The translations under genes were made by a program, and so were the position numbers. 64,000 nt of DNA from Geosiphon pyriformis uo1 (taxonomy: Eukaryota; Fungi; Glomeromycota). Below the pieces are notes generated by a model, which saw nothing but the letters and a program-made list of their open reading frames with translations, was not told the DNA's origin and ran no database searches. This document shows positions 1 through 59,652 of this stretch, one piece after another (the first letter of the stretch is position 1; the number at the start of each line of letters is the position of its first letter). The stretch covers positions 1,129,696-1,193,695 of the forward strand of contig JAAOMT010000602.1 of NCBI GenBank assembly GCA_016748015.1. Direction: 5' to 3'.

Positions 1-735
1 TGCTGTGAAAGTCAACTCTTCTACAGAAATCTTGTCTGTAGGCTACCCTAATGATTGTAATAAGAAAATAAAAGAAAAATAAAAGAAATGTAAAAGAAAT
101 AGAATTCTGTCAAGGGAAACGTTTTCTATCCAGGCCTGGAGTCACTAACAGTTTTACTGAAATTGGTAGCTAATCAATTTCGAAATGTTAGTTGGGTTTT
201 GGGGATTTTCCAAGTACAATAATTAAAGAATTTGGTTTTTCGAATTATTTAATATTTATTTCTTTTTGTGTATAGAAACGGTTTTAAAAGATAAATCTAA
301 AGTAAGATACATTTTCCAGAAGAGAAAAGCTCTTCTTTTATACAACTTGTTATAGTACTAGTCTATGAACTTGCACTTTTTCTCTTTGCTCAAATTTCAG
401 CGAACTAAAGATACATTTTGATGAATTACAAGTTATTTCACTGAACTATTGATTAATTTGGGTGAACTATTCATAATTTCGGCGAATTTCTGTAAATTTC
501 GGCGAATTTCTTATAAATTTCGGCGAATTTTTGAATGTTACAAAGTTCAGGGTATTGTGTAATTTGATCATTCTACTTTCTGTTATACTAATTAGATTAT
601 TTTAATTGAATCGTGATATGTGATAATTGATTAAATAATAAATGATAATTTGAAATGATATTAATATACTAATGAATTATAGGAATTATAAGGGTAATTT
701 CATGCTAATTAATAGCTAAAATTCTACTGGTAACA
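1..735 (-). repeat. 3' LTR of family A element (partial)
   Basis: Matches 8931..9644 and ends CTGGTAACA next to the PPT. Confidence 0.93.
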
Positions 736-1423
736 TAATCTCCTCCTCAAGACTGAGCTCCGTCAAAGTCCAAGCACTATCTGTAATATTGAGATAGTAA
801 TCTAAAATAATTGAAGTTATCTGGTCTGAAAATTGTTGAAATTTCAGTTCTGTGAGTTTGCTAATGTATTGGACTTTCATTGGTTGCAGTATTGGATTTT
901 GTAGAATATTTTCACAAGTATTAAACAAGTCATAGAGTCTAAGAGCTGCTCTAAGTTTGTAGCGAATGTTTGTTGGTCCAGCTGTTGTTTTGAATTCATT
1001 GTGGATTTGTTTTTGTATAACTTCAGGAGTGAGATTTGTTGCTTCAAGTTCCAGTTTTCGTTCATAAAGTGTTTTTCCAATTTGAAAGTATTTATAGATA
1101 GAAATGTGTTCATTGTTCTGTTCATTAAGAAGTAGTAGAAGTTTTTGTTGCATTGTAGCATTTGGTGGAATGTCAATAAGGGCAATTAAAAAATTTTCTT
1201 CTAGTGCCTGCTTCAAAAGTCTTGGTAATCTATTCTCAGAGTGACTTCTTGTTTTTCTTCTATAGGGGTGATAGTTCTGTAAATGATTTGCTATTGGGGC
1301 TGTGGTTTCTTTCTGAATGTAATTAATTTGACTTCCATTAATCGTTATAGATAAGTCAGGGAGTGTTTTCAAGGCTAACATTAATTTTTGGGATATTTGT
1401 TGAATATTTTGGGGAATAATCAT
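716..1423 (-). CDS. Extra ORF downstream of pol in the family A element (235 aa, unknown function)
   Basis: Intact ATG-started ORF co-oriented with pol. It reads through the PPT and stops ~20 nt inside the 3' LTR. Confidence 0.65.
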   Translation of the reverse strand: MIIPQNIQQISQKLMLALKTLPDLSITINGSQINYIQKETTAPIANHLQNYHPYRRKTRSHSENRLPRLLKQALEENFLIALIDIPPNATMQQKLLLLLNEQNNEHISIYKYFQIGKTLYERKLELEATNLTPEVIQKQIHNEFKTTAGPTNIRYKLRAALRLYDLFNTCENILQNPILQPMKVQYISKLTELKFQQFSDQITSIILDYYLNITDSAWTLTELSLEEEIMLPVEF

Positions 1424-1599
1424 GATAAAATTGACTAATTATGAAAAGAGAGAATAAAGAAAATTATTTTTGGATATGGGGTTTTTATTTGTTTTTGGGT
1501 TTGGGTGTTTTGTAATTATTTACTATTTTTGTCTTTGTGTTTTTATTAGAAAATTATTGTAAAATTTAAGTGTTCAAGTTTGGTTGTTGTTCTATTATA

Positions 1600-4444
1600 A
1601 TTATTGGTTCTAAATTTTGGGGAATATCTTCAGGATTAATTAAAGGGGAATGTATACCAATTTGTGGAATTAATGGTTCAGGATTGTTTCTGGAATGATA
1701 GTGTTTCAATCTGTCTCCATGTGCAACTTTTGCTAATATTTTGTTATCAAGTCTTAACTTATATGATCCATTATCTAGAATTTCGTGAATATAAAATAGT
1801 CCATCCTATTTGTTTTCAAATTTCCCACTCCATTGTTTTTCAGCCTTAGTTCTATGTAAGAGAACTTTATTTCCAACTTTAAATTTGTTGGTAATAGGTA
1901 GTAATTTGTTGTCATGTCTTTTTTTTTGTTGAGCTTGAAAATGTTCAATATGAGTTGCTGCTATTCTTTTTTTTCCTTCCAGTGTACTAAGAAGAGTGTA
2001 AGCTCTTTTTTGGAGTGTCTCTTGAAAGTTTTCTTCATTGATTGGTTGCACTGGATATGTTTCTACTGTAAAATTAATTGGTAATATTGCTGTTCTTCCA
2101 TAAGTAAGATCAAATGGTGTGTGTTTCATAGTATCTTGTTTTAGTGTTCTGTATGCTAGTAACACTGATGGAATAAAGATATCTTATTTCTGCTCAAAGT
2201 CTGTTGGGACTTTGGCTAAAGATTCACATAATGTTCTGTTGAAACATTCTACAAATCCATTTGTTTGAGAGTGATAAGGTGATGATAAAGGTCTTTTGAC
2301 ATTGAACTATTCACAAATTTCTTGTATTAAGTTGTTTACAAAATGTGTTCCTTGATCAGATAAGAGTTCAATTGGGCATCCATGTCTACAAATAATGTCT
2401 TCATAGATAAAATTTACTACTGATTTTGCATCTGCTCTTTGGATGGCTTTAGCTTCAGGCCATTTGATAAGATAATCCACTGCAACTGCAATATAACAAT
2501 TTTCTTGGGTTGTGATAGGTAATGGTCTGACTAAATCAATTCCAACTCTGTCAAAAGGTTGTCCAACTTTGATTGGATTTAAAGATTCTGTAGGGCGAGT
2601 TCCTCCTCTTTTTTGATAATTATCACAAAATTTTACATATTGTCGAATGTCTTTTTGCATGTGAGACCAAAAATAATGTTCAAGGGTTCTTTGAATTGTT
2701 TCCTCTTTTCCCAAGTGTGCTGAAGACGGATCTGTGTGCATGTTATATAAAATTGTTTTTTTTTATTCTCTTGTACTAATTTGAATGGCTGGTTTGGTTT
2801 TCTGTAATTTTTATAATAGATTTTGTTTTGGTGTATGAAATATTGTTTTGATTGGTGTTGTAAGTGGTGTTTTTTACTTGGAGACCAGTTTTCTGGCATG
2901 GTAAGAGTCTCCAAATAATTTTTAAGATTGCTGTAGTTTCTGGGATCCATTCTTGTTTGGTTATTTTGTTGATAAGTTGGTAAGTTGTGGTGGAATTGTT
3001 GTTGGTATTAATCTTGTCTCATTCTTAAGAGACTATCAATATTGGTATGTAGTTTTCCTGATTTGTGGTGTACAATATATCTGTAGTCTGCTAGGAAGTC
3101 ATTCCATCAAAACTGTTTGGCACTTTGTTCAGTTTTCTTTTTATTGAGCCATTTAAGGCCAATGTTGTCCATTATTATGTCAAATTCTTTTCCATTCTTC
3201 AGATATTGTTGAAAATGTTTAAGAGCCCAAATAACTGCAGCAGCTTCTAATTCAGTTGAGCCATATTTGAGTTCTGTTGGCTTGAGTGTTCTGCTGGCAT
3301 AGGCAATAACTTGTTCTTGGCCATTTTCATCCAATTGTGATAAGATGGCACCAAATGCTAAGTGTGAGGCATCAGTGGCTAATTGGAATCGTTTGTTGAA
3401 GTCTGGGTAAGCAAGAACTGGGGCTGTTGTTAATTTTGTTTTGAGAATTTCAAAAGCTTTTTGTTGTTCTTCAGTCTATTTGTATGGTACGTTTTTGTTG
3501 GTAAGATAATTGAGTGGTTTGGCAATTTCTGAGAATTCTTTTATGAATTTTTGATAGTAAGAGGCTAATCCCACAAATCCTCTTAGTTCTGTAGTATTTC
3601 TGGGGATTTGAAAGTTTTTGACAGCACTGATTGTTCCTGGATTTGGTTTTATTCCATCTTTACTAACTATGTGTCCAAGAAAGATTAAGCTTGTTTTTCC
3701 AAAGTAACATTTCTCAATATTTAACTTTAATCCTACTTTCTGTAATCATTGAAAAACTTCTCGCAGGTAAATAAGATGGGCTTCAAAGCTTGGTGAGTAT
3801 ACATCAGTATTATCAAGATAAACAACTACTGATTGCCACAAGAGCCCTTCATAGACAACATTCATGAGTTGCTGAAATGTTGCTGGTGTATTGCAGAGTC
3901 CAAAAGGCATAACATTAAACTCATAATTTCCTTCTTAAGTGGTGAATGCTGTTTTGGGTCTATCTTTTGGGTCCATTTCGACTCGTCAGTATCCACTTTC
4001 CAGGTCTAAAGTTGAAAAGAACTTGGCTTTTCCTAGAGCATCTAGCATGTCATCAATTCTTGAAAGAGAGTAGGCATTTCCAATTGTAATACTATTCAGT
4101 TGTCTATAATCAACACAGAATCTGATTTTTCCGTTTTTCTTTTTAACTAAAACTACTGGTGAGGCCCAAGGACTTCTTGATGGTTAAATCAATCCGTTAT
4201 TGAGCATTCTTTGGACCTCTTTTCTAATGAATTGGTGGTTGGCAGGTGGCATTCGATAAGCTTGTTGACGTTTTGGTAAAGCATTTCTTGTATGGATCTG
4301 ATGTTGAACAATGTCTGTTTTTCCCAAGTCATTGTTGTCTTTTGCAAATATATCTGCAAATTCAGCTATCAATTGTTTCAATTGTCTTTGTTGTTGAGGT
4401 TCTAAGAGACCCATATTGATTTGAGAGAGTTTTTCTTCCAACAA
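1600..4444 (-). pseudogene. pol remnant: reverse transcriptase, RNase H, integrase
   Basis: RT motifs SPVVLVKKK/IRFCVDYRQLN/MPFGL; RNase H VIAYASRTL..YGSTELE; integrase GQPFDRVGIDLV, VDYLIKWPEAKAI, LLSDQGTHF, TPFDLTYGR. Many stops. Confidence 0.93.
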
Positions 4445-46521: not shown

Positions 46522-49500
46522 ATGCCCGTTTTTTCTTATTTCGCGAAGAATCTGTCGCGACTAAGCAATGCCGCGGCACAAATTTTTCACTGTCATGGAC
46601 AGTTTTGCGCTTCCCATCAAGTCACCCTCATTATATTGGCCCTTTTTTTAGTCTTTACGCTCTTCCATCCCACCTTTGAAACCTATTATTTAAAGCCGAA
46701 AAATAGCGGTCAAATTCATTTTTGGGAATCCCCTTCATCCCGTTCACCCCTAAGTAAGGAGGTTTTCGTTCAAAAATATGGCACTCGGCCTTCAGTACGC
46801 GTCGTGCAAATTCTGATAAATGCCACTGCAACACATAGAGGGCATCGGATCGGTCAAGGAAAAGGTGTCTTCGATAAGAATCTGCTGCTTTGGACATTAC
46901 AATTACAGGAGCGGATCGCTTCCACCGAGATTGTTTACCCCCCAATTTCCACTTCTCCTTTGACCCCACTCTCAAATGCAAACCCATCAGCAAGCGCTCC
47001 TAATAAATACTCACTCTCCGACTTTTGCTTCAAACCCTTCTCTGATAAAAACTGCTTGGTTCATTCTCCCCTCGAATTTTGGAGTAACAATCACGAAAAA
47101 TTGGCGTCAGATAGCGCCATCATCAACACTCTAGCAAAGGAAAAACCAAAATCTTCATTTAATATCCCCATTCCCGTTTATTCTGTATTTGGAAAACCAG
47201 AATATTCTCAAAAGACTGGTAGAATAATTGGCGCAGAATCAATTATTCTAACATATTTCTTGGAAGACATGAGCAATTGGCCTGAGGGTATGACCGTTGA
47301 AATATGGGAACTTTTATGGCAAAAAGTGATGCAGAATCAAGACATGGGCCATATTGGAGGCTCTCAGGTTGAAGCCGTCAATATTGTAAATCATGGTGAA
47401 TTGGAACATTTATTATACTATGTAAGTTTACGTTATTCTTTGTTTTTACTATCGAACTTCCACACTTAACTTAAATTATTATATTTATGATCCATCAGTT
47501 TAATAATTCCCAGTATGGGATTACAGCTGAATATAGCTTATTAGCTCTTGTATCTCTATGCTGGTTTCTGTACATATCTTTCTCGATTGGAAGATTAAAT
47601 GTGGTCAAGTCAAAGTTTGGCCTTGGATTTTCTGCAGTTGCCCAAATGATTGCATCTTTAATAAGTTCTGTTAGTATTTGTTCTCTTTTTGGAGTCACTT
47701 TTACTCTGTTTCCTTGGTAAGTAAATTTGAAAAGAATTTTAAAAATAAAAATAAAAATTTCTAAGGACATTTTTTTCCAGGGAGATTTTGCCATTTATTC
47801 CGATGATCATCAGTGCTGAAAACTGCATTATTTTGACAAATGCGGTGACCTCAACAACCATGGAACTTGAGGTCAAGGAAAGAGTCGCAATTGGTTTGAG
47901 CAATGTGGGGCTTTCCATTACCAACTACCTTGGTTTGGAGATCCTCTGTTTTTTGCTCTTTTCCGCAACGAATATTGTTTCGGTGCAAGATTTTTCTCTT
48001 TTTCTCTCCATAGCTGTAATTATCGATTACATTCTACAAATGACTTTCTTTATTACCACACTCTCCATTGATCTTCGAAGGCTGGAGGTAAAATTTTTGA
48101 TTCTACATTATAAAATTTTTCATACTTCACAATTCGAATAAATTATTGTTGTTGTTATTATTTGTCTTAGATTTCTGATTTGTATAATCGGAGGCCTCTT
48201 GTTACCAATCATAGCAATAAAAAATTGTCGACTGGTCTTAGTACAACCAATGGGAAGCCTGGTGTTTTGCCGAAACCTATTACTTTTACGGCAAGAAGGA
48301 TTTTTAGCTTTCTAGCGGTAAATCAATAATTTGAAATTTAAAAATCCCTTTATTACTTGCCTCATTTTGGTTATTTTACTGAATACTTACCCAGATCCTT
48401 ATAGTTATGGGTGTCCTTAGTAACTTCTATCCGGCAGCGGTTGATATAAAAATCACAACTTCCATTATGGCTAGTTTCAATCCCCGAAAAGCAGTCATTG
48501 CAGAACAACTGGTCAACAACACGTTCTGGATGGCCGAAACTGCATCAACTGCAGATCCTTTTTGGGAAACAGTAAACCCTAGCAAAGAGCCCCGCTATTT
48601 TGAAATTCGTCCGGCAAAACTAGTAACTATTATTAGAGAGAAAGAAAAGGATGAATTTGAAAGTCGCGATACTGTTTCAGGACAATTTGATCTTCAGCCA
48701 CATAATAAATTTGAAAAATGGAAACGCTACGTCATTATTTCCATCAAATCAACTGCTTGGTTTATTAAATTTGTAGCGGCACCCGCTGTTGGAATAGCAT
48801 TAGGAATATCTTTCTTATTGCATTTCCTCTTATCACCAGATCGATACAATAGGAAGGGCCGCGATTCAAGGGCTCCTATTATAAAATTACCAAAAAAATC
48901 ATCAAATTCTTTAGCTTCTTTTTCCCCTAGAGTGATTACCTTACGTGGTCGTCACTCAGCAGATATTGACCTTTTGTGTGCCAACTCGAAGGGTCTGGTC
49001 ATTTCTACCGCAACTGATAAACACATTACCTCCTGGGACGGAAGACTTGGTACCCCATTAAGGAAGTTGGAGAGATATATGCGTCGATGCTCGACTTGTA
49101 AATGTGGTACGACCGGAGGAATGAAAAATTGCATTTCCTGGCCAGTAAGAGCTCTTTGTGCTAGCGAAAAAGTTGAACTTGCTGCCGCAGGGTTTGAAGA
49201 TGGTGTAGTCCGTGTTTGGGATATTAACTCTGGTCAAGCAAGCCATATCCTAAAAGATACCGTGGATGATGTTGAGTCCGTTATATCAGTAATGACAGGC
49301 CATTCTCCAAAAGAACGTGTCACTTGTTTACAATTTGTTGCACGCTCAAACTCATCGGTCAACAAAAAAGAAGGGTTCTTGGAAGACTCGAGATCTGCCA
49401 TGTTGATCGCGGCATACCGCAATGGATATATTCGTGAGTGGGACCTTAAATCTGGCCAAATTTCAAACACAATTGCCACAAATCAAAAGTCTGGGATTAG

Positions 49501-51247
49501 TGTCTTATGTGTTTTAGATAACGAGTCTACAGATAACAGTCGAAATGATCTGCGAATGTATTCAGGTGCACGGGATGGCACGGTGCGTTGTTGGGTTCGT
49601 AGAATCATAGAAGGGGAAAAGGAATGTATAATTAAGGATAAAGATTCAGCCGAAGCGCGAAAAAGTTCTTGGAAAGCTGTATACACTCTTGTTGGACGAG
49701 ATGGCAATGCTATCACATGCATTGCTGCCAAGGTAGTAGAGATCAAAAAAAATCCTTATGGTATTGTCGTCACCGGTGCAGCTGATGGTGAAGTTAGAGT
49801 ATACGATTATGTGACTGGAGGACATCTCATGACATTAAGTCCAGGTGCTTTATGGAAGCAGAAACGCGAAAAAGAACGCATTCAAGAAAATTTAATATTA
49901 AAAAACGAGAAACTTCTACGGAAGCAATTACGACTACGACAAGCATATCTCAAAAGCAGCATTCTAGAAACCCCTTCTGATTCTGATGAAGATTTATATG
50001 ACGAGGACTTTGAGGAATATGAAGAAACTTCTCACAATGAATTAATCACAAACATTATTATCCATCCTTTAGAGCAAAAAAGTTGCCCTTGTGGAAATAC
50101 CGAAGCAGGAGATGGTTTTTGGATAGTTACTGGCTCACTTGATGAGAAAGTACATGTTTGGAAATTGGATCGAAATGTCATGGATTGTAGCTGCATGGCT
50201 TTGCAAATTTCGAGACCTGCTTCGCTTGCGACGAGACATAACTTTGCTAAGGAAATTTCTGAATTTGGAACTACGAGAGACAATTTAGGATATGATTTCT
50301 CCCATCAATATCGAGTCTTCAATTCGGATAAAGGAATTAGTGGCGTGATAAATGATTTTCCAGGGAAGAATGTTGTCAAATGGAATGGCGTGGTGTCATA
50401 TCGGCCTAAATTTTATGGTCGAGTCACTCAGCCAGGTGGTTCAGCGATAGTATTCATGAGGGATAATGTGGTGGGTGTTCGACAAACAAAAAAGGATAAA
50501 ATAAATTCAATAAAGTATAAATCGCAGGCAACCTCAACACGTAACGGAACCCATAGTGTTGAAGGTGAATGGGAGGTTTGGTTACTAGACCTTAATAATC
50601 CCAAACGTTTCGATAATATCCCTGACAAGCAGCGCAATAGTTTCGATACTGATCAAGAGGTAATGGAATTATTAGTAACGACAATACCATTAGTTGATGA
50701 AAGTGACTTAAAGATTGAGGAAGAGCAAAGACGGAAAGAAACTCTTAGGCGACGTGAGAAAAAGAAATCCACAGACTTACGCGGCTTCGTACCGCAAAGA
50801 CGGCGAGTTCTCAATGAAAATAGGAATTTTTCCAAGGCCAGCATAGTAGCAAAGTTCCCATCATCTACCGTCCCAACGGTTGGAACAACGTCGATTTCAC
50901 CAAACTACAAGGAAAATCCTTATAATCAACATCCTGAACACTCCAATGAAGCTCATATTCATGATGAAGAGGAGACACAAGGGCAAGTTATTGGGCAGGT
51001 TTATGACTATCGACAGAAAATGCTGAGGCGGGCCAGCATGTTGCATCGTGTGTATCCCAAAAATGTAACCAATAGTATAAATAATGAATTAACATTGGGT
51101 CTTGATGATGAGGATCAGATGAACGAACTATTGCCATTTGCGTTTATACGACAAGTGGTTAAAGTTGGGGAGGAAGGCGTTGCTGTTGGATATGGGAATT
51201 TCGTTAAGGTTGTATTATTTGAGGAGATTGATGAACCTACTTTATAA
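46522..51247 (+). CDS. SCAP: SREBP cleavage-activating protein homologue (sterol-sensing domain + WD40), 5 exons
   Basis: Exons 46522-47421, 47499-47716, 47781-48087, 48171-48317, 48395-51247. N-terminal FHCHGQFCASH, CLVHSPLEFW loop, SSD YISF..VKSKFGLG..EILPF..EN, spliced SIDLRRLEISDL (MELADL-like), C-terminal WD40 repeats. Confidence 0.88.
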
Positions 51248-52040
51248 TAACCCATATCCAACGCTCATCTGCAATTTAAAAGAACTTTATCCCAGAGGCA
51301 AAAAGTAAAAACATTTTTCATCACATTTACATAACTGTGTGTTCTCTTTAGAAATAATGGGAACCACTTGCTCTTCAGATTATGATCATTAGAAAATAAT
51401 TTGTAATAAATTCAAAAGCAGTTCGTGTGAGTTTTGCTTTAATATGAAGTTCAGACACGATTTAGAACTCTCAATTTAATTTTATATGAATAACTGCTAA
51501 AGCTTGACTGGTTCAACTTATTGGCTTCAAATAAATTAATTTATTATATAACTACTTTTTACTTATATCTTGAGCAGAAAAAATACTTTCACTCTACTAT
51601 GAGGTCTCACTTGATTTTTTAGCAGTACCATTCCCGAAAACCCTAAAAGTCAACATGAAAAAAGGAGTTTAAAAATTTCCAACTACTCCTAAGGAGTAAT
51701 GGTTGCAATGACATTTTTAAGTTCCTTGAATTTCAACAATCATTCTGTTCTAAGGTCGAGTAGTGGCTAAAACAATTTTACGCCTTACTTTATATAAACT
51801 TGCTCAAGCAGGAATTGATGATATGCGCCAGCGTATCTCCATACAGCGCATAGCATTACAAACGCGTTAAATTTCACGAGAGATTGCATCGAAACCATTT
51901 GTCCAGAATATTCTAAAGCCGAGATTTAGGATTTACATTGCCTTAGCCACAATTATAAAATGAGTAAACGAAACCTTTCCCAGCAAACCAACACTTTCTT
52001 CTACCCTTTTGTGATTTTTCTTTCCATAAACAAGTAAATT

Positions 52041-53544
52041 ATGGCAACTGCAGTTAAAGAAGCTATTAAGGATCTTAGGAGACGTATCGAGGATAAAGTT
52101 GCTATTATTACTGGTGCTGGCAGGTAAATAATTGAACTAGACCGCTTAAAACGTCGGGTACCTTTTTAACATTAAGAAGATAAATATGAGAGAAAATGAT
52201 TATTCAAACATTAAATTCGGCTTATTTTTAATAGCGGGGTCGGGTTCGAGTCTGCTGTCCTTTTCGCCAAGGAAGGTGCTCGAGTTATTGCTGCTGACAT
52301 AGACCTTAAAGCTGCTGAGAGGGCTGTTGAGAGAATAAAAGACGTCATCGGGCCGTTGCATCTTAGTAAACGCGCTCTCGCATATCAAGTTGATGTCACT
52401 AAAGAAGCAGAAGTAAAAAAATTGGTGGAGACGGCCTTAAGAGAATTTGGTGAGGTTTTGAATTGGATTTCATTTATCAATTATCAATTTTCTAATTACA
52501 TTTTTGTGATGTACCTTATTTCATATTGGAAATAGGAAAACTCGACATTATTTTCAATAACGCGGGGATAATGCATCCGCATGATGAAAATGCCCTCAAT
52601 ACAGATGAAAAAGTTTGGTAAATGTGACCTTAAAAGGCCGGCATTTCAAATTTCAAATTAAATCTTTATGCTTATTTTCAAACATGATTATTCACTTTGA
52701 TATCTTCAATGCATTGAAGGGACGTTACATTTAATACTAATCTCAAAGGTGTCTGGTACGGTTGTAAATATGCTATTGAAGCATTTCATCGTGGTGGAAA
52801 GGGTGGTAGCATTATCAATACTTCCAGCTTCGTAGGAACTTTGGGTTCAGCTACTCCTCAGATTGCTTGTTAGTTCTTTTTTTGTATCTCAATTTCTCGA
52901 ATTAAAAAAACATAATAGTTCTTAATAATCAATTTTCATCATGTAAAACTATAGATACGGCATCAAAGGGGGCTGTTATTGCTTTAAGGTATAACGCTCT
53001 TTTAATTATCATTTTTCCTTTCTTTTAATATCTAAACGATTCAATTGTTATGACATTTTTAAATGTAGCCGTGAGTTGGCCGTCACTCATGCGCGTGAAG
53101 GTATCCGCATCAACGCACTTTCACCTGGACCTCTAAATACCCCATTGCTTCAAAAGTTCCTCGATACAGATGATAAGAAACAAAGAAGATTAGTACATGT
53201 TCCTATCGGACGGTTTGGTAAGCAGTTAGAGAAAGCTTATGGTATATTAACTTCGTTTCAGAAAGATTCATGGGAAATTGCGAATTCTTAGGTGAACCAA
53301 TTGAAATCGCTCAAGCGGCTCTCTTCCTTGCCTCAGACGAGTCGAGCTACATAACAGGGACCGAGTTTAAGGTTGATGGTGGCATTACGGCTGCATACGT
53401 GGTTAGTATTGTCTACAAAGATTAAACTATTACGCTGGCCTATTTAAAATCAAATATTAATATTATTTTTAGACTCCCGAAGGTGCTACCAAGAGTGTCG
53501 CACCAAAGAATTGGAACAAGGGAGACAAAAAAGCCTCTCAGTAA
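52041..53544 (+). CDS. Short-chain dehydrogenase/reductase (classical SDR), about 8 exons
   Basis: Spliced [49 protein letters not shown]; GT-AG introns. Confidence 0.9.
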
Positions 53545-53919
53545 CTTTTGGTCGACTTGGACAACGTTCGTTTGGGATGTATATTATATTTAAAATGTAT
53601 AAAAATGTGAATAAATTATTAAAGAGTAGGTTTCCCTTTTATTATTTGTGATTAAAAGGAAGCAATCAAAAATGAATTTTTGAAAGATGTTATTTAACAT
53701 TAGGATTATAATCGTAACTTGAACATCCATCAGAATTAAAAATAAAATACTTTTGAATAATGAACAATTATATACAGGAGAAAAACCAAAGCAATTTTAA
53801 GAGCTACCAAAATTGAATTAGTCTAACATTTGCATTATAAAATGAGTAATAATAAAGTAGATTTGATGGGAGGTTGTTGAACAATGACTATTTACAATTA
53901 ATCTATGAGGATTTTGTAT

Positions 53920-56900
53920 TTATGAGTTTTGACACGATCCAACAATTAGGGGTAATTCGATTGGTGAAGATGGGGGTGTGGAAGTCTGTGTTATAATAGA
54001 GCGTCCCCGCCTAAGAATCGGTTTTCTAGCATTGTGAAACTGATTATGCTGATGGACATGATGCTGTTGAGAGGGCGCAGCCCGATTATGTTGCATATGT
54101 GACTTTACTAAATGACCAGCCGCAAGAGCTGCACAAAGACTAAGTTCACCAGCCATTACAGCAGCACAAACGATGCGCGCAAGCTTTTGAGCATTAGCCC
54201 CTGGGGTGGTGGGGTGAGGACCCCGCACTCCAAGCATATCCAACATCGCCGCTTGAGGTGGTAGAACTGTTCCACCACCAATCGTGCCTATTTCAATGGA
54301 GGGCATTGTGCAGCTAAGATGCAAGTCTTGACGATTGTTTACTCTGTTAAATGGGAAAGATGAATTTGATCAAACTCGATGACATTATAGTTAAGCAAGA
54401 AAATAAATGAGTTTACAACTTACGATTTCATCAAAGTAATGCAATTAGAACTTTCTACATTTTGCGCTGGATCTTGACCAGTTGCAATATATATTGCAGT
54501 CAATATATTGGCGGCGTGTGCGTTGAAACCGCCGATTGAGCCAGCCATTGCGGATCCAATTAGATTTTTTGAAATATTCAATTCTACAAGTGCTTCAACA
54601 CTAGTCTTTAGAACTTTTTCCACAACAGATCCAGGAATGATACATTCAGCGACGACAGACTTCCCTCGCCCTTCAATCCAATTGATAGCAGCGGGTTTCT
54701 TGTCCGTGCACTACATTAATTTTGCATCTTAAATTAACATATCAAGAAACGTTATAAAGTAATGGTTTTAAAAGATTTCTTACATTATGAACAACGATCC
54801 CGTTGGCGACATAGTTTTCTGTGGTTGAAACAGAGAGATCATAAACTTCCCGCAGGCCATTTTCATATTTATTATTAGCCGAGACATTCTCGAAACTGAA
54901 TTCCTCTTCAGACTCCACTCCGCTGTCAATTAAGTCTATGGCAAGGGTTTTCACCTTTGTAACACCCAATGTGAACGAGAATTGATTCTCGTCACTGAAA
55001 GTGTCCCAAACGTATCCACATTTCTTCAGAAATGTATCGAACTTAGCAGGGGAGACCAGATGGTTCTTTTCTACCTCAGCGTTAAAATAAGCAAGCCAAA
55101 CTGTCCAACGTGATAGATTTTCGTTGGAGTACAAGACTCCCACATTATCTATGAATTTGGAGACCGAACTTGCCGGAATATTAATTTCGACTAAAAAGTA
55201 AACCTCCTTGAAGCTAGTATTGTCAAATCTCTTTGCCGGGCTTGTTTGATAAGTTTTGTCTATCTTCCTTTGATCTGAATAGCACTCTGCCTTATGCATT
55301 TCTTTTAATGTTATTGGAACCCCCAGGCGGTAAAAGGCAGTTTTTAATTCATCAAGAGTTTTCCTAAGCGCTTGGCGCCTTAGATTATCCGCTGCAATCG
55401 TCTCCCTTCGGCCCTCCAATCGTGTAGAAATACGAGCAAGAATAAAATGTTCAGGTATAAGACAACTGCTGTGGCTTGTGTTAAAGGAGGGCACACTGCC
55501 ATTGGCACCACAAAAAGCTGCAAGGAAGCGTCGTACAACTATCTTAGGGGTATTAGCATCAGAAACCCATGTGGGAAGCTGAGTAGTTTTGCGCTCTTTT
55601 GGAAGTCCTGCAAGAAGCAGATGTCGTCCAATATTTCGCGAGAGAGCCACCTTCCACGAATTTCCCTGGGTGGTTTTGGAATAGATAACATCACGTTTCA
55701 ATCCAGGATCCAAGATCTGGGCGTCAGCAAAAATGTGATCTACATCAAGATGATGCCCAAGTTGATGGACCGGTTGATTATTTTGAGAGATATGTCCATT
55801 ACCGAAGTGATGTCCTGCTATCGTCGCGAGAGCAAGTATCTTCTCACGCTCATTGGTCATAGTATATTCACCAAAACTAAAAGCAGCCTCAAGTTGCATT
55901 TCGTGACTGTCAGATGCCGGATCTGCCGTGTTTGTGATGGCCGAACATACAACGCGATGGCCGGGGACAATCTCGCCGTCTTCGAGGATTGTTTCTGAAA
56001 TGAGATCCTCAATATTGACATAATCAGCGTCTTTGACCGTCTTACCTGGAGCAACGGCGAGCACTCGGTGATTAGGAGTCGCAACCAAGTTGCGGCCATC
56101 TTCTAGAATCAACTCGACACACTTTTTAGTGCCATTATCCCAGAAACGAATAACTTCATTGTTGGGCTGGATTTCTTTGTCATCAGCAACTTCGTAAGGG
56201 CGACCCAACTTCGTCAAAGCAGCTTTTTCCGTGTCATCATTAAAATCCTGAACCTCAATAATATCCGTGCCGTCGGCACCAACATCAAATATCTTGACAA
56301 TTGGGGCTTTGACGCGTTCGGTCCAAGACATCACGCTTTGCCCCTGGATATCGTTTTCACGACCTTTAATAGACTCGATGGGTATCGCCATGCCGTTACT
56401 GAGCGTGATTTTTGTACCTTTAGCGACGCAGTAATTTCCAGAAAGCGAAATGATTTGCATGTCAGGGAAATGTTCCGACACTACAGATAGTGCTTTTTCA
56501 CATCCTTTCGAAATCATATTCATCCCCATAGCATCGCCGGTAAATGTGGCAAACCGAATGAAAAGCAATTTACCAGCAAGTGCGGTTTTGATCCCTTGTA
56601 GACGAGCAAATCGTGAGGTAGAATTAAAAGATGTCTTTATTATTTCATAACCTTCATTTTCTAGCCATTTTTGGGCTGCACCAGCTCGCGTAATGTTTGG
56701 AAATTCTACACATGGACCACGAGTCATTCTATCCTTTGTTACTATTGTAATCGCGCCACCACCAGCATTAATTGCCTTACAGCCACGCGAGGTAGATGCC
56801 ACAAGACAACCCTCAGTTGTAGCCATAGGTATGTGGATACTTTCTCCATCAATGTTCATGGGGCCTGCCACCCCAATAGGAATAGGCATATAGCCAATGA

Positions 56901-59652
56901 CATTTTCACAACAGGCACCCATTACTTTCCCGTAATCGTAGTTTTTCAAAGGCAAAAGTGAATTTTCTAGAGATTTTGTGGCAGATGCTCGAGAAATCAA
57001 TGCTCGTCTTATTTTAACAGCCCTTTCAAAATTTCCTAAAACTTTTTCGAGAGCGTATTGAGCGATTTTCCCATTTGTAGCCAGCATCAGTATCTCATCA
57101 TCGCTCAAATTGACGGCGCCTTGACCTGGTGTTTCAAGTATTGCGAGACACTCTTCTTCAGAGCGAAGTTCCAAAACCTTTATTCCAGCATTTAAAGAAG
57201 CTGAAGGAAGCTTAGATGTGATAGCAAATTCCTCAAAATGGGTTTTAGCCTCCAAAGATTTTGCGTTATTCTGGGAGGGGGCAGCAGACGAAGCATCCTC
57301 TTCAGTTTGAGCAATAACTGAATCCTTTTTGGTTTTTGGTTTCAAAAGAGCTTTGGGTGAAGTGATTGAAACTCGGTTGACAATATCGTGCACAATCTTG
57401 GGCTGTTTGTAAGAGTTTAATAAATAAACGTTTAAAAAAATTGAAAGGGATAGGCCAAGTGATATCCACTTGGATAAGACTGGATCCTGTACGAAGTAAG
57501 ACCAAAAGTCCATGGCTGAGTCCAAGCTCTTATAAAGAGCTTGGGTTACAGGGCTATAACCAGACGTTATGCTAAATATTAGCGGAGGAGCCACATCAAT
57601 AATCAAAGGTAAATGAGCCCGAGAGCTTTGTCTATGTTGTATGAGAAGTTCATCAAGTATTGGGGATATTGTGGAGTCATTAAGGGCTAGCTGGTCTTTC
57701 TTGACATCCAAGTCTTTTAGTGCTTTTGGCTCGTCGTTATTGTGTAATGTTGTGCAATAATTCATTATGTGCATTATGACGAAACCGATTATGATTAATA
57801 ATTTTAAGCGCGCAATCATTGGATTGTCGTATTTTTTTTTCTCATCAGTAATAATGGTGTTATCACGAAATGCTTTAATTATATTTTGACGAATGTTTGC
57901 GGGGCTGCTTTTGAGTTCTTCATCCTTTTCTACAGAGGTTTTTTTTGTGTTTGCTTGACGTATCCGAGTCAACTATTATTAATTTGTAAGATTCAATCAT
58001 TAATAATTCAATTCAAATCTTAGAAAAAGAAATGAGATCTGGAATTTACCTCGAGTTTCAATGTCAACATAGCAGTATAGAATGTGTATAGGAAAAGGCA
58101 ATCGTATAACAAGATGAAAGCGGCCAAAAAACAAAACTCTTGTAAAGCTGTAACGCCAGAAGCTACACCAAAAATAAGGATAGCGGTTTCGATCAAGTAG
58201 GCACGAACAATGGAATTTGCCGATTTGCTAACACCTGCAAGCACATTATCACGAACATTATAAGGGATGGAAGCAGGGGACCTTGCCTCTGCAGAAGTCA
58301 TTGGATCTGATTTGGATTTGGATGCCTGGATTACAGCCCTCGTGAGGCTAACTGGCTTTTCGAACCCAATAGTGATGACCAAGAACGGGATGGCTTCACT
58401 ATATGTGGGAATATTATTGGGTTCAAAAATCAAGAATTCGGCTTAAAAAGAGTTGTTGAGTGATATAAATTACCTTAAGAGTATAGGATTCACGTTCACA
58501 TTGAATAAATTGACAGTTAATATCGCGCACATGAAGGCAAAAAATCCGTTTGCTATTACGCAAATTGCTAATATTAATTGAAGGAGATTCAGGTTAATGC
58601 CAATATATATATATTCAAAAAAGCATTAAATGAAATAATTTGTTATAAAATCATACCAAGAATGAATCGAGAACCAATTTTACGCATATTTAGAAATAAG
58701 GCGAGGAAAGTAAGAAGCATTAAGATGTAGCCAGCCAGAATGACCAAAATGTCCAGAGTTTCTGCCTTCTAAAAAATTTATCGATACAATATAAATATTT
58801 CTTTGTCTGAGAAATGATGAAACCCAACTATAAATCAAAAAAATTTACATGTATTAAATCCTGAACTTTCAAGAGAAGAGTACCAGCTGCTAAAGCTAAA
58901 GAGCCAAGAGATCCTTTCTCCGAATAAGATTGATGCCTTCTACCCGTTGATACCAATTCATTGTAATTGAGAGCGGCAATTTTTTTTTCCCATATATTCG
59001 ACCAATGTACACGGAATGGACCATTGACATTTAACGCATATGTAAGAATCAGGGAGGCGTCATCAATATTGAATTTGTTTAAGTCGGTTGTTTTTAGAAG
59101 CTCTTCAACATTCAAAATGTCTAGAGGCTCAGAAATCATTTGATTAATGCGTAATTTCTCCGATTCATGATCATAGAATGCCAAGGAGGTTCTGGTAAAA
59201 CAAGTTGTATTGCCATCTTCTACTTTATGGCACAAATGATCATTAAATTTCAATTTGTTTGCACCGTCGTTTATTAATAGTTCGTTCTCAATAAGACTTT
59301 GAAAATTAAGCACTGTCTTTAATATTTTTTGACTGAATAATGGTCGTGATTTTTTTATAGACTGTTCAGCGGGATTTAATAAAACAATCATCTTAAGCTG
59401 TATGTGGTTGGCTTTGGGAAGCGAGTCGTGTTTTGTGAGGGTAAAAAATTGGTCAGAATCTGGTCGAGCTATCATTTTTGTGGGTTCCATTATCGGTGTA
59501 GGATCCACGAATAAGTTGGACTCTAGGATCGAACGGAACAGGGCAGCATATGAGAATGAAGCGATTATTAGACAACATACAATCATTTCAATTGGATTCC
59601 GTGAAGAGAATCTTGCGGCCTTTCGAGCAAGCTCGTTCGTGGTTTGTAGCAT
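53920..59652 (-). CDS. HMG1: Class I HMG-CoA reductase with SSD membrane domain and an intein, 7 exons
   Basis: Exons approx. 59652-58849, 58768-58657, 58568-58474, 58398-58050, 57972-54784, 54710-54424, 54343-53920. [19 protein letters not shown]; catalytic [59 protein letters not shown]. Confidence 0.96.
54711..54783 (-). other. 73-nt phase-0 spliceosomal intron at the intein C-terminal splice junction
   Basis: Minus strand reads CAT AAT|GTAAGA...TTAATGTAG|TGC ACG GAC AAG AAA; removal gives HN|[17 protein letters not shown]. Confidence 0.92.
54784..56430 (-). mobile_element. Intein (549 aa) with degenerate LAGLIDADG homing endonuclease, in HMG-CoA reductase
   Basis: In-frame 1647-nt insertion between GNY and CTDKK. 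Block [14 protein letters not shown]; block [14 protein letters not shown]; LAGLIDADG-like IAGHHFGNG and [10 protein letters not shown]; blocks F/G VYDLSV...[11 protein letters not shown]; Cys+1 after intron removal. Confidence 0.95.

What the first reader, a model, noticed from the sequence alone, without database searches (positions are those of the whole stretch)
54711..54783. Spliceosomal intron exactly separates the intein's terminal Asn from the Cys+1 nucleophile: RNA splicing gates protein splicing
Seen: CAT AAT|gtaaga..73 nt..atgtag|TGC ACG GAC AAG. If the intron is retained the product is [15 protein letters not shown]-stop, with no +1 nucleophile and no catalytic Lys/Asp/His. Established: class 1 inteins need Cys/Ser/Thr at +1. 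Inference: active HMGR needs two sequential splicing events at the same junction. The intron also interrupts the DNA homing site. Either the intein invaded an exon-intron boundary, or the intron arose afterwards, or it acts as immunity against endonuclease cleavage.
Basis: partly seen in the sequence, partly recalled or inferred. Interest (0 to 1): 0.88.

Follow-up and report, generated by a model that had tools for sequence, protein, structure and literature searches.

The report
Intron abutting an intein in HMG-CoA reductase
In the only HMG-CoA reductase gene of the fungus Geosiphon pyriformis, a real 73-base intron sits exactly between the last codon of a self-excising protein element (intein) and the cysteine it needs; this is probably a relic of the known link between inteins and introns at homing sites, not a regulatory switch.

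Summary
On the minus strand a 73-nt GT..AG intron (54711-54783) lies in phase 0 between the intein's terminal Asn codon (ends 54784) and the TGC Cys+1 codon (54710). A cDNA-like public contig skips exactly these 73 bases and keeps the intein sequence. NCBI's own model for Geosiphon pyriformis, G9A89_010399, reads [15 protein letters not shown].

'RNA splicing gates protein splicing' holds only in the trivial sense that any intron must be removed first. I found no evidence of regulation.

The new result is comparative:
- Both Ambispora species, the closest sampled relatives, lack the intein but have an intron 2 nt downstream, in phase 2 of the same Cys codon.
- Ten other fungal HMGR genes have neither element there.
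- Every other shared intron keeps its phase.

So the intron is restricted to this lineage and tied to the intein's homing site. This resembles Bathycoccus PRP8 and Anaeramoeba, except that here both elements sit together in one allele. The intein's endonuclease has Asn in place of both catalytic Asp residues, so the system looks fossilised. The order of events is unresolved. The scan had already noted the intein itself (s1-495475).

I rate this a new variant of a known kind, of moderate interest.

The parts
54711..54783 (-). Junction intron: 73 nt, GTAAGA...TAG, phase 0, between intein Asn549 and extein Cys+1
   Evidence: Sequence. Skipped exactly in the cDNA-like contig. Spliced in NCBI model P0001. 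Unique in the genome. GC 0.22, like the neighbouring introns.
54784..56430 (-). Intein coding region: 549 codons, from Cys1 (CVAKGT...) to ...NGIVVHN
   Evidence: Pfam Intein_splicing scores 62.3 bits against a cut-off of 35.8. Translation. Block B is TPNH. Retained in the RNA contigs.
55792..55836 (-). First LAGLIDADG motif ([15 protein letters not shown]), with Asn211 where relatives have the catalytic Asp
   Evidence: Translation. Alignment with 28 related intein segments.
55495..55533 (-). Second LAGLIDADG motif ([13 protein letters not shown]), with Asn310 where relatives have the catalytic Asp
   Evidence: Translation. Alignment.
56431..57972 (-). N-extein part of exon 4, ending ...[10 protein letters not shown]. 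It holds the linker and the first half of the HMGR catalytic domain.
   Evidence: Pfam HMG-CoA_red profile positions 1-201. Exon map.
54424..54710 (-). Exon 5: begins with Cys+1 ([11 protein letters not shown]...) and ends ...NCITLMK + TC. It carries the catalytic Lys and Asp.
   Evidence: Translation. Pfam positions 195-289. RNA contig.
54344..54423 (-). Last intron: 80 nt, phase 2 in the in-frame model. The RNA contig instead uses an acceptor 17 nt further on (intron 54327-54423, 97 nt), which is out of frame.
   Evidence: Gene model. RNA contig. Position shared with Ambispora and Rhizophagus clarus.
53920..54343 (-). Exon 6 to the stop codon. It carries the catalytic His (VKSHM) and the C-terminal tail.
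   Evidence: Translation. Pfam positions 287-368.
58050..59652 (-). Exons 1-3 with two introns (exons 58849-59652, 58657-58768, 58050-58441), encoding the sterol-sensing membrane domain
   Evidence: Mapping of P0001 on the window. Pfam PF12349 on P0001.

Best explanation
Shown. The single HMG-CoA reductase gene of Geosiphon pyriformis carries a 549-aa class-1 intein inserted at SGNY|CTDKK, three residues before the catalytic Lys. An ordinary U2-type 73-nt intron is placed in phase 0 exactly at the intein/C-extein boundary. Expression therefore needs pre-mRNA splicing, which brings Cys+1 and the C-extein into frame, followed by protein splicing. This is the normal order of gene expression, and I see no evidence that it is a switch.

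Shown. The intron's position is not random. It belongs to a lineage-restricted intron at the intein's homing site. Intein-free Ambispora has an intron 2 nt downstream, inside the Cys+1 codon. Ten other fungi have no intron there.

Inferred. The intron is tied historically to the intein's homing site. It was either gained at breaks made by the homing endonuclease, or selected because it destroys the endonuclease's target. Both ideas have been proposed for Bathycoccus PRP8 and for Anaeramoeba. The system is now fossilised: both catalytic Asp residues of the LAGLIDADG endonuclease are Asn. The intein is kept because precise loss from an essential single-copy gene is hard.
For: - Sequence and reading frames.
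- A spliced RNA contig removes exactly 54711-54783 and keeps the intein.
- NCBI's model has the same junction.
- There is one HMGR locus in the 128-Mb genome.
- Intein family match and motifs.
- Ambispora leptoticha and A. gerdemannii read TAC/TAT TG|gtaag...ttag|T/C ACG and have no intein.
- SGNYCTDKK is uninterrupted in Rhizophagus clarus, Gigaspora rosea, Diversispora eburnea, Entrophospora, Acaulospora, Jimgerdemannia, Mortierella, Phycomyces, Basidiobolus and one unnamed fungus.
- All other shared introns keep identical phase across these taxa; only this one differs, by 2 nt.
- The chance of an intron within 2 nt of the site is about 0.001-0.01 (my arithmetic from the counts).
- Asn211 and Asn310 stand where most relatives have Asp.
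- Precedents in the literature: PMC3749507 and PMC10710043.
Against: - No RNA data can show or exclude regulated retention, because contigs drop minor forms.
- Canonical homing into an allele that already had the intron should erase the intron, and any homologous recombinant should keep it in phase 2, not phase 0. No single simple event yields the Geosiphon structure.
- Orthology of the Geosiphon and Ambispora introns cannot be tested by sequence. Even introns that are certainly orthologous are at noise level.
- Only two Ambispora genomes represent the sister lineage. No Archaeospora or Paraglomus locus could be fetched.
- The cleavage site of this endonuclease is unknown.
Confidence: 0.72

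Rival explanations
1. Regulatory gating. Retention of this intron is used to control how much splice-competent precursor is made, so RNA splicing acts as a switch on protein splicing and on HMGR activity.
For: Retention would give a precursor without a +1 nucleophile and without the catalytic Lys, Asp and His. HMGR is a classically regulated enzyme (general knowledge).
Against: The same is true of any intron upstream of essential residues. This intron is typical in size, signals and composition. The only RNA contig is spliced here. Ambispora has the intron without any intein, so the intron does not exist to serve an intein. A retained transcript has an early stop upstream of another intron, and so would be expected to be degraded (inference).
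Confidence: 0.07
2. History A. One intron was gained in the common ancestor of Geosiphon and Ambispora. The intein arrived later in the Geosiphon line through a non-canonical, end-joining type of integration at the exon end, with a 2-nt shift of the boundary.
For: This needs the fewest intron gains. The intron is present in both lineages and absent outside them. Only Geosiphon has the intein among thousands of HMGRs scored.
Against: It needs a 2-nt slide, whereas all other introns keep their phase. An intron at the target should block endonuclease cleavage, and canonical repair would delete it (inference from the homing mechanism). No donor lineage is visible: the nearest inteins are about 32% identical.
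Confidence: 0.3
3. History B. The intein entered an intron-free site in the ancestor by normal homing, and introns were then gained at the endonuclease's cut site. One gain, in phase 2, occurred in empty alleles, made them resistant and survives in Ambispora. The other, in phase 0, occurred beside the intein and survives in Geosiphon.
For: All outgroups offer an intact, intron-free target. The 2-nt offset lies within the 4-nt stagger typical of LAGLIDADG cuts around insertion sites (general knowledge, not tested here). It matches the 'intein-primed intron gain' and barrier ideas in PMC3749507 and PMC10710043. The endonuclease is decayed and the intein's codon usage resembles the host's (r = 0.79), which suggests long residence.
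Against: It needs two gains and lineage sorting. There is no known reason for a break at the intein/C-extein junction of an allele that already holds the intein. The 7-nt direct repeat at the intron ends is not significant.
Confidence: 0.3
4. Coincidence. An ordinary lineage-specific intron happens to lie next to an unrelated intein insertion.
For: Introns near inteins occur elsewhere without comment. One example is Phaeosphaeria nodorum RPA2, with an intron at alignment position 1192 and the intein at 1195 (PMC1635734). The sample of lineages is small.
Against: The chance is about 0.001-0.01 (from counts). This is the only intron whose phase differs between the sister lineages. The genome's second intein (SF3B1) also has an intron ending 6 nt from its junction. 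Two independent published cases show the same association.
Confidence: 0.15
5. Intein decay. The Ambispora intron is what remains of a degenerated intein that became spliced out at the RNA level.
For: It is listed as one scenario for Bathycoccus (PMC3749507).
Against: In Geosiphon the intron exists beside an intact full-length intein, so the intron is not made from the intein there. The Ambispora introns are 68-74 nt long and AT-rich like their neighbours.
Confidence: 0.04

Closest known systems
Bathycoccus PRP8 site-d intein and polymorphic intron (Monier et al. 2013, PMC3749507)
   Same: A spliceosomal intron lies in the very codon where an intein inserts. It is absent from other relatives. 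The intron-bearing, intein-free form corresponds to Ambispora.
   Different: [quoted passage not shown] In Geosiphon both sit in cis, with the intron abutting the intein's last codon. The host gene (HMGR), kingdom (fungi) and phase (0 and 2, against 1) also differ.
Anaeramoeba paralogues with introns at or near intein sites (Gallot-Lavallee et al. 2023, PMC10710043), and Eupenicillium prp8 as cited there
   Same: Introns lie at or within a few nucleotides of intein target sites in copies that lack the intein. They are interpreted as barriers to homing.
   Different: Those cases compare paralogues, and the intein and intron are again in different gene copies. Here they are orthologues in sister genera, plus one allele carrying both.
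Nuclear fungal inteins with LAGLIDADG endonucleases (VMA1, PRP8 and the relatives found here in PolB, MYST and GCN5 proteins)
   Same: Cys1, TxxH, terminal His-Asn and Cys+1 are all present, and the insertion is in a highly conserved active-site loop. The intein has the same two-motif endonuclease architecture.
   Different: HMGR does not appear in the main text of the 2018 survey of eukaryotic inteins (PMC5784728). The nearest relative is only about 32% identical. Both catalytic Asp residues are Asn.
Phaeosphaeria nodorum RPA2 and Chlamydomonas RPB2 inteins (Goodwin et al. 2006, PMC1635734)
   Same: Each has an intron in the same gene within a few codons of the intein (alignment positions 1192 against 1195, and 1688 against 1696).
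   Different: The introns are not at the exact junction. The authors did not discuss the proximity, and no intein-free sister with an intron at the site was reported.

Membership tests
Class 1 intein | N-terminal Cys/Ser nucleophile (block A) | tested here: met
   The intein starts [10 protein letters not shown] directly after SGNY.
Class 1 intein | Block B TxxH | tested here: met
   TPNH aligns with TPDH/TPNH of 28 related inteins.
Class 1 intein | C-terminal His-Asn followed by Cys/Ser/Thr at +1 | tested here: met
   ...NGIVVHN, then Cys, but only after the 73-nt intron is removed. With the intron retained, +1 is Val.
Class 1 intein | Match to the intein splicing domain profile above the curated cut-off | tested here: met
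   PF14890 scores 62.3 bits against a cut-off of 35.8, E = 6e-17.
Class 1 intein | Protein splicing activity | not testable with these tools
   Inferred from intact motifs and from HMGR being single-copy.
Active LAGLIDADG homing endonuclease | One catalytic Asp/Glu at the end of each of the two LAGLIDADG motifs | tested here: not met
   Asn211 (GNG) and Asn310 (ANG) stand where most of the 28 relatives have Asp (TDG, GDG).
U2-type spliceosomal intron | GT..AG ends and removal from RNA | tested here: met
   The ends are GTAAGA...TAG, and exactly 73 nt are absent from the cDNA-like contig.
U2-type spliceosomal intron | Size and composition like other introns of the gene | tested here: met
   73 nt and GC 0.22, against 77-215 nt and GC 0.21-0.29.
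U2-type spliceosomal intron | Branch-point sequence | tested here: inconclusive
   TTAAT-like motifs lie 6 and about 27 nt before the acceptor. I used no model of the branch site.
Intron at an intein homing site, mutually exclusive with the intein (Bathycoccus type) | Intron in the codon of the insertion site in an intein-free homologue, absent from other relatives | tested here: met
   Two Ambispora species have it, in phase 2 of the Cys codon. Ten other fungi do not.
Intron at an intein homing site, mutually exclusive with the intein (Bathycoccus type) | Intein and intron never occur in the same allele | tested here: not met
   Geosiphon carries both, adjacent in cis.
Regulated intron retention ('gating') | A retained isoform whose level varies with conditions | not testable with these tools
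   Only one run was available, kept as contigs, which drop minor forms.

The most novel reading that the evidence does not exclude
Cuts made by the intein's homing endonuclease at the HMGR site seeded new spliceosomal introns in early Archaeosporales. On this reading, the 2-nt difference between the Geosiphon (phase 0) and Ambispora (phase 2) introns is the footprint of a staggered LAGLIDADG cut repaired with captured filler DNA. Geosiphon would then preserve, in one allele, both the invader and the scar. That would make it a natural record of endonuclease-primed intron gain.
Probability: 0.25. Interest if true: 0.8.

Novelty: new variant of a known kind. Interest (0 to 1): 0.55.

Why it matters
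How new spliceosomal introns arise is an open question. Repair of double-strand breaks is one leading idea, and inteins provide a natural nuclease that cuts one defined site. Two earlier cases, Bathycoccus PRP8 and Anaeramoeba, showed introns at empty intein sites. Geosiphon and Ambispora add a fungal case in an enzyme outside the usual replication and splicing hosts. As far as I could find, it is also the first case where intein and intron share one allele at the same junction.

That arrangement constrains the models. Simple homing cannot produce it, and the idea that the intron acts as a barrier and so excludes the intein is not universally true. The case is testable with a few more Archaeosporales loci and one endonuclease assay.

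As a practical point, annotation pipelines and intein surveys that work on single ORFs will miss the +1 residue of this intein.

Tried and rejected
- **Intron orthology by sequence.** Geosiphon-Ambispora alignment scores are no better than shuffles for the junction intron. The same holds for three introns that are certainly orthologous, so the test has no power.
- **Direct repeat at the intron ends.** TAATGTA occurs at both ends of the junction intron. Its uncorrected p is about 0.04 among 27 introns tested, and an ancient intron scores better. It is not evidence for insertion.
- **Repeated 'introner' family.** The 73 nt match only themselves in the 128-Mb genome.
- **Intein removed at the RNA level.** Rejected, because the RNA contigs contain 418 + 903 nt of intein sequence contiguous with exon 5. 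A cryptic donor just after the intein's first codon (GTCGCT) is poor and would leave an extra Cys.
- **Second, intein-free HMGR copy.** None was found.
- **Other HMGR inteins.** None appeared among the candidates scored from 5.8 billion proteins. The exhaustive profile search found no relative above about 32% identity, and there was no match to solved structures by sequence.
- **Recent foreign origin of the intein.** GC3 is 0.42 against 0.34 in the extein, but the codon-usage correlation is 0.79. There is no clear foreign signal.
- **The two inteins of this genome as recent copies of each other.** They are only 23% identical.
- **Spliced models.** I sent no self-joined spliced model to any search tool. 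The only spliced protein searched was the database's own P0001, and exon pieces were used by reference.
Full report
**What is there**

The window's minus strand carries a six-exon HMG-CoA reductase (HMGR) gene. The exons are 58849-59652, 58657-58768, 58050-58441, 54784-57972, 54424-54710 and 53920-54343. The large fourth exon is one open frame. It runs from the linker and first half of the catalytic domain (Pfam HMG-CoA_red positions 1-201), through ...SLSGNY, straight into a 549-codon insert that begins CVAKGT and ends NGIVVHN.

That insert matches the Pfam intein splicing domain above the curated cut-off (62.3 bits against 35.8). It has Cys1, a TPNH block B and a terminal His-Asn. Directly after the Asn codon comes gtaaga...atgtag, 73 nt (54711-54783). 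Then comes TGC ACG GAC AAG..., which translates to [20 protein letters not shown].

In all other HMGRs the sequence reads SGNYCTDKKP without interruption. So the intein sits between Tyr and the conserved Cys, three residues before the catalytic Lys of the cis-loop. The assignment of Lys, Asp and His as catalytic residues rests on the published HMGR literature, not on a test here.

**Is the intron real?**

Yes. One public run (X1, kept as Logan contigs) holds a 1078-nt contig identical to the window that joins 54784 to 54710. It skips exactly 73 nt, with GT..AG ends on the gene strand and no ambiguity in the cut position. The same contig also lacks the next intron. It extends 418 nt into the intein, and a second contig covers 55271-56173 inside the intein.

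The genome has one HMGR locus and one copy of the intron sequence. A contig lacking two introns must therefore come from spliced RNA, even though the run's record does not say it is RNA.

The organism is Geosiphon pyriformis. Its NCBI protein G9A89_010399 (P0001, 1735 aa) is 100% identical to the query and reads ...[18 protein letters not shown]....

**What 'gating' amounts to**

The gene is single-copy, and the exons after the intron carry Cys+1 and the catalytic Lys, Asp and His. Active enzyme therefore needs RNA splicing and then protein splicing at one junction. That statement is correct, but it describes the ordinary order of expression.

- The intron resembles its neighbours: 73 nt against 77-80 nt for three of the four others, and GC 0.22 against 0.21-0.29.
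- The only RNA contig is spliced at this site.
- Ambispora keeps an intron at this site without any intein.

I found nothing that points to control, and contigs cannot measure retention.

**The comparative result**

I fetched genomic loci for 12 intein-free fungal HMGR genes and mapped introns by threading each database protein on its locus.

- **Ambispora.** Both A. leptoticha and A. gerdemannii belong to the same order as Geosiphon and are its best protein matches. Gene order is also conserved in A. leptoticha, the one locus where neighbours were examined: SCAP-like gene, short-chain dehydrogenase, HMGR. Both species read TAC/TAT TG | gtaag...ttag | T/C ACG. That is an intron in phase 2 inside the very Cys codon that serves as +1 in Geosiphon, 2 nt downstream of the intein insertion point.
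- **Other fungi.** Rhizophagus clarus, Gigaspora rosea, Diversispora eburnea, Entrophospora sp., Acaulospora colombiana, Jimgerdemannia, Mortierella, Phycomyces, Basidiobolus and one unnamed fungus from a Logan assembly all have GGN AAY TAY TGY ACN GAY AAR uninterrupted.
- **Other introns.** On the protein alignment, every other intron that Geosiphon shares with other taxa keeps exactly the same position and phase. Only this one differs, phase 0 against phase 2.

With five or six introns per gene, the chance of one falling within 2 nt of the intein site is about 0.001-0.01. This is my arithmetic from the counts.

**State of the intein**

Among thousands of HMGRs scored, only the Geosiphon protein covers the intein. 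An exhaustive profile search of 1.84 billion representatives found nothing closer than about 32% identity. The top hits examined were inteins in family B DNA polymerases and a MYST acetyltransferase, plus a GCN5-type protein.

I aligned the intein with 28 of these relatives. The two LAGLIDADG motifs are recognisable, but each has Asn where most relatives have the catalytic Asp: Asn211 in GNG and Asn310 in ANG. From what is known of this enzyme family, such a protein may still bind DNA but should not cut it.

Codon usage resembles that of the host gene (r = 0.79), with somewhat higher GC3. Together these point to an old, immobile intein that persists because precise loss from an essential single-copy gene is unlikely.

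**How it most likely came about**

The literature already links inteins and introns at one site.

- In Bathycoccus PRP8, an intein and a 135-bp intron occupy the same codon in different alleles and are mutually exclusive. The authors raise replacement, entry through recombination, and intein decay as possible origins (PMC3749507).
- In Anaeramoeba, introns lie at or within 3 nt of intein sites in paralogues that lack the intein, and are read as barriers to homing (PMC10710043).

Ambispora fits this pattern. Geosiphon does not, because both elements are in one allele.

Reasoning from the homing mechanism (inference only): canonical break repair from an intron-free donor would delete a pre-existing intron, and any homologous recombinant between an intein allele and a phase-2 intron allele would keep phase 2. 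The phase-0 arrangement therefore needs one of three things:

- a non-canonical integration at the exon end plus a 2-nt shift;
- an intron gained beside an intein already in place;
- two separate gains at the cut site.

The 2-nt offset is within the 4-nt stagger that LAGLIDADG enzymes typically leave around their insertion sites. This is general knowledge and a lead, not a test. I give the 'intron first' and 'intein first' histories about equal weight. Pure coincidence gets about 0.15 and regulatory gating under 0.1.

**Limits**

- Orthology of the Geosiphon and Ambispora introns cannot be tested by sequence. Even certainly orthologous introns of the two genera align no better than shuffles.
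- A 7-nt repeat at the intron ends is not significant.
- Only one RNA-derived data set exists here, and it does not reach the N-extein/intein junction.
- No Archaeospora or Paraglomus locus could be obtained.
- I sent no self-joined spliced model to any search. The only spliced protein used was the database's own P0001, and exons were otherwise used by reference.

**Comparison with what is known, and novelty**

HMGR does not appear in the main text of the 2018 survey of eukaryotic inteins (PMC5784728) or of the Anaeramoeba paper. No paper in the library joins 'intein' with HMG-CoA reductase as a natural host.

For the finding in hand, the association of an intron with an intein site is a known kind. 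Near co-occurrence in one gene has been tabulated before without comment: Phaeosphaeria nodorum RPA2 has an intron 3 alignment positions from the intein (PMC1635734). What I could not find described is an intron abutting the intein's last codon together with an intein-free sister lineage whose intron is 2 nt away. I class it as a new variant of a known kind.

**Verdict**

- The mechanistic headline, gating, is not supported beyond the trivial sense.
- The evolutionary reading is partly supported, and sharpened by the Ambispora result.
- Interest is 0.55.

Noticed in passing
window 54327-54423 (minus strand): The RNA-derived contig removes 97 nt from the last intron, using the acceptor at 54327. 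The in-frame model removes 80 nt, using the acceptor at 54344. The 97-nt form shifts the frame and hits a stop four codons later (LMKS-LAS-stop), which would delete the catalytic His region. It may be an unproductive alternative 3' splice site. Its share of transcripts is unknown.
   Followed up: partly
window 54005: The RNA contig has one C fewer in a CCCC run than the genome. The genome version keeps a C-terminal ...GSCQNS that resembles the Ambispora ends (GSCLRS, GSCLKS). The contig difference therefore looks like a homopolymer error or a variant.
   Followed up: partly
G000:C416, locus L006 about 430-1950 (minus strand): The genome's second intein, in SF3B1, also has an intron very close to a junction: GAG|gtatgt...tttag|GAA TCT, then TGC TTA (Cys1), so the intron ends 6 nt upstream of the intein. 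Its C-junction (VVHN-CIDLVG) has no intron. Its LAGLIDADG motifs also lack the Asp residues (GYVTSKS, GGKAV). It is only 23% identical to the HMGR intein.
   Followed up: partly
window 48407-53545 and locus L007 1-2242: Gene order is conserved between Geosiphon and Ambispora leptoticha: a SCAP-like sterol-sensing/WD40 protein, a short-chain dehydrogenase, then HMGR. Two sterol-sensing-domain genes are therefore neighbours.
   Followed up: no
window about 57780 (alignment column 565): Geosiphon has lost a phase-0 intron (before ...IIGFVI) that is present in both Ambispora species, Rhizophagus clarus, Gigaspora, Diversispora and Phycomyces. As a result, its fourth exon is an unusually long 3189 nt.
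   Followed up: no
loci L007 and L008, second intron: The NCBI models of the two Ambispora HMGRs skip 30-45 conserved residues of the sterol-sensing domain (around ...[16 protein letters not shown]) by calling introns of about 300 nt. These are probably annotation errors, not real differences.
   Followed up: no
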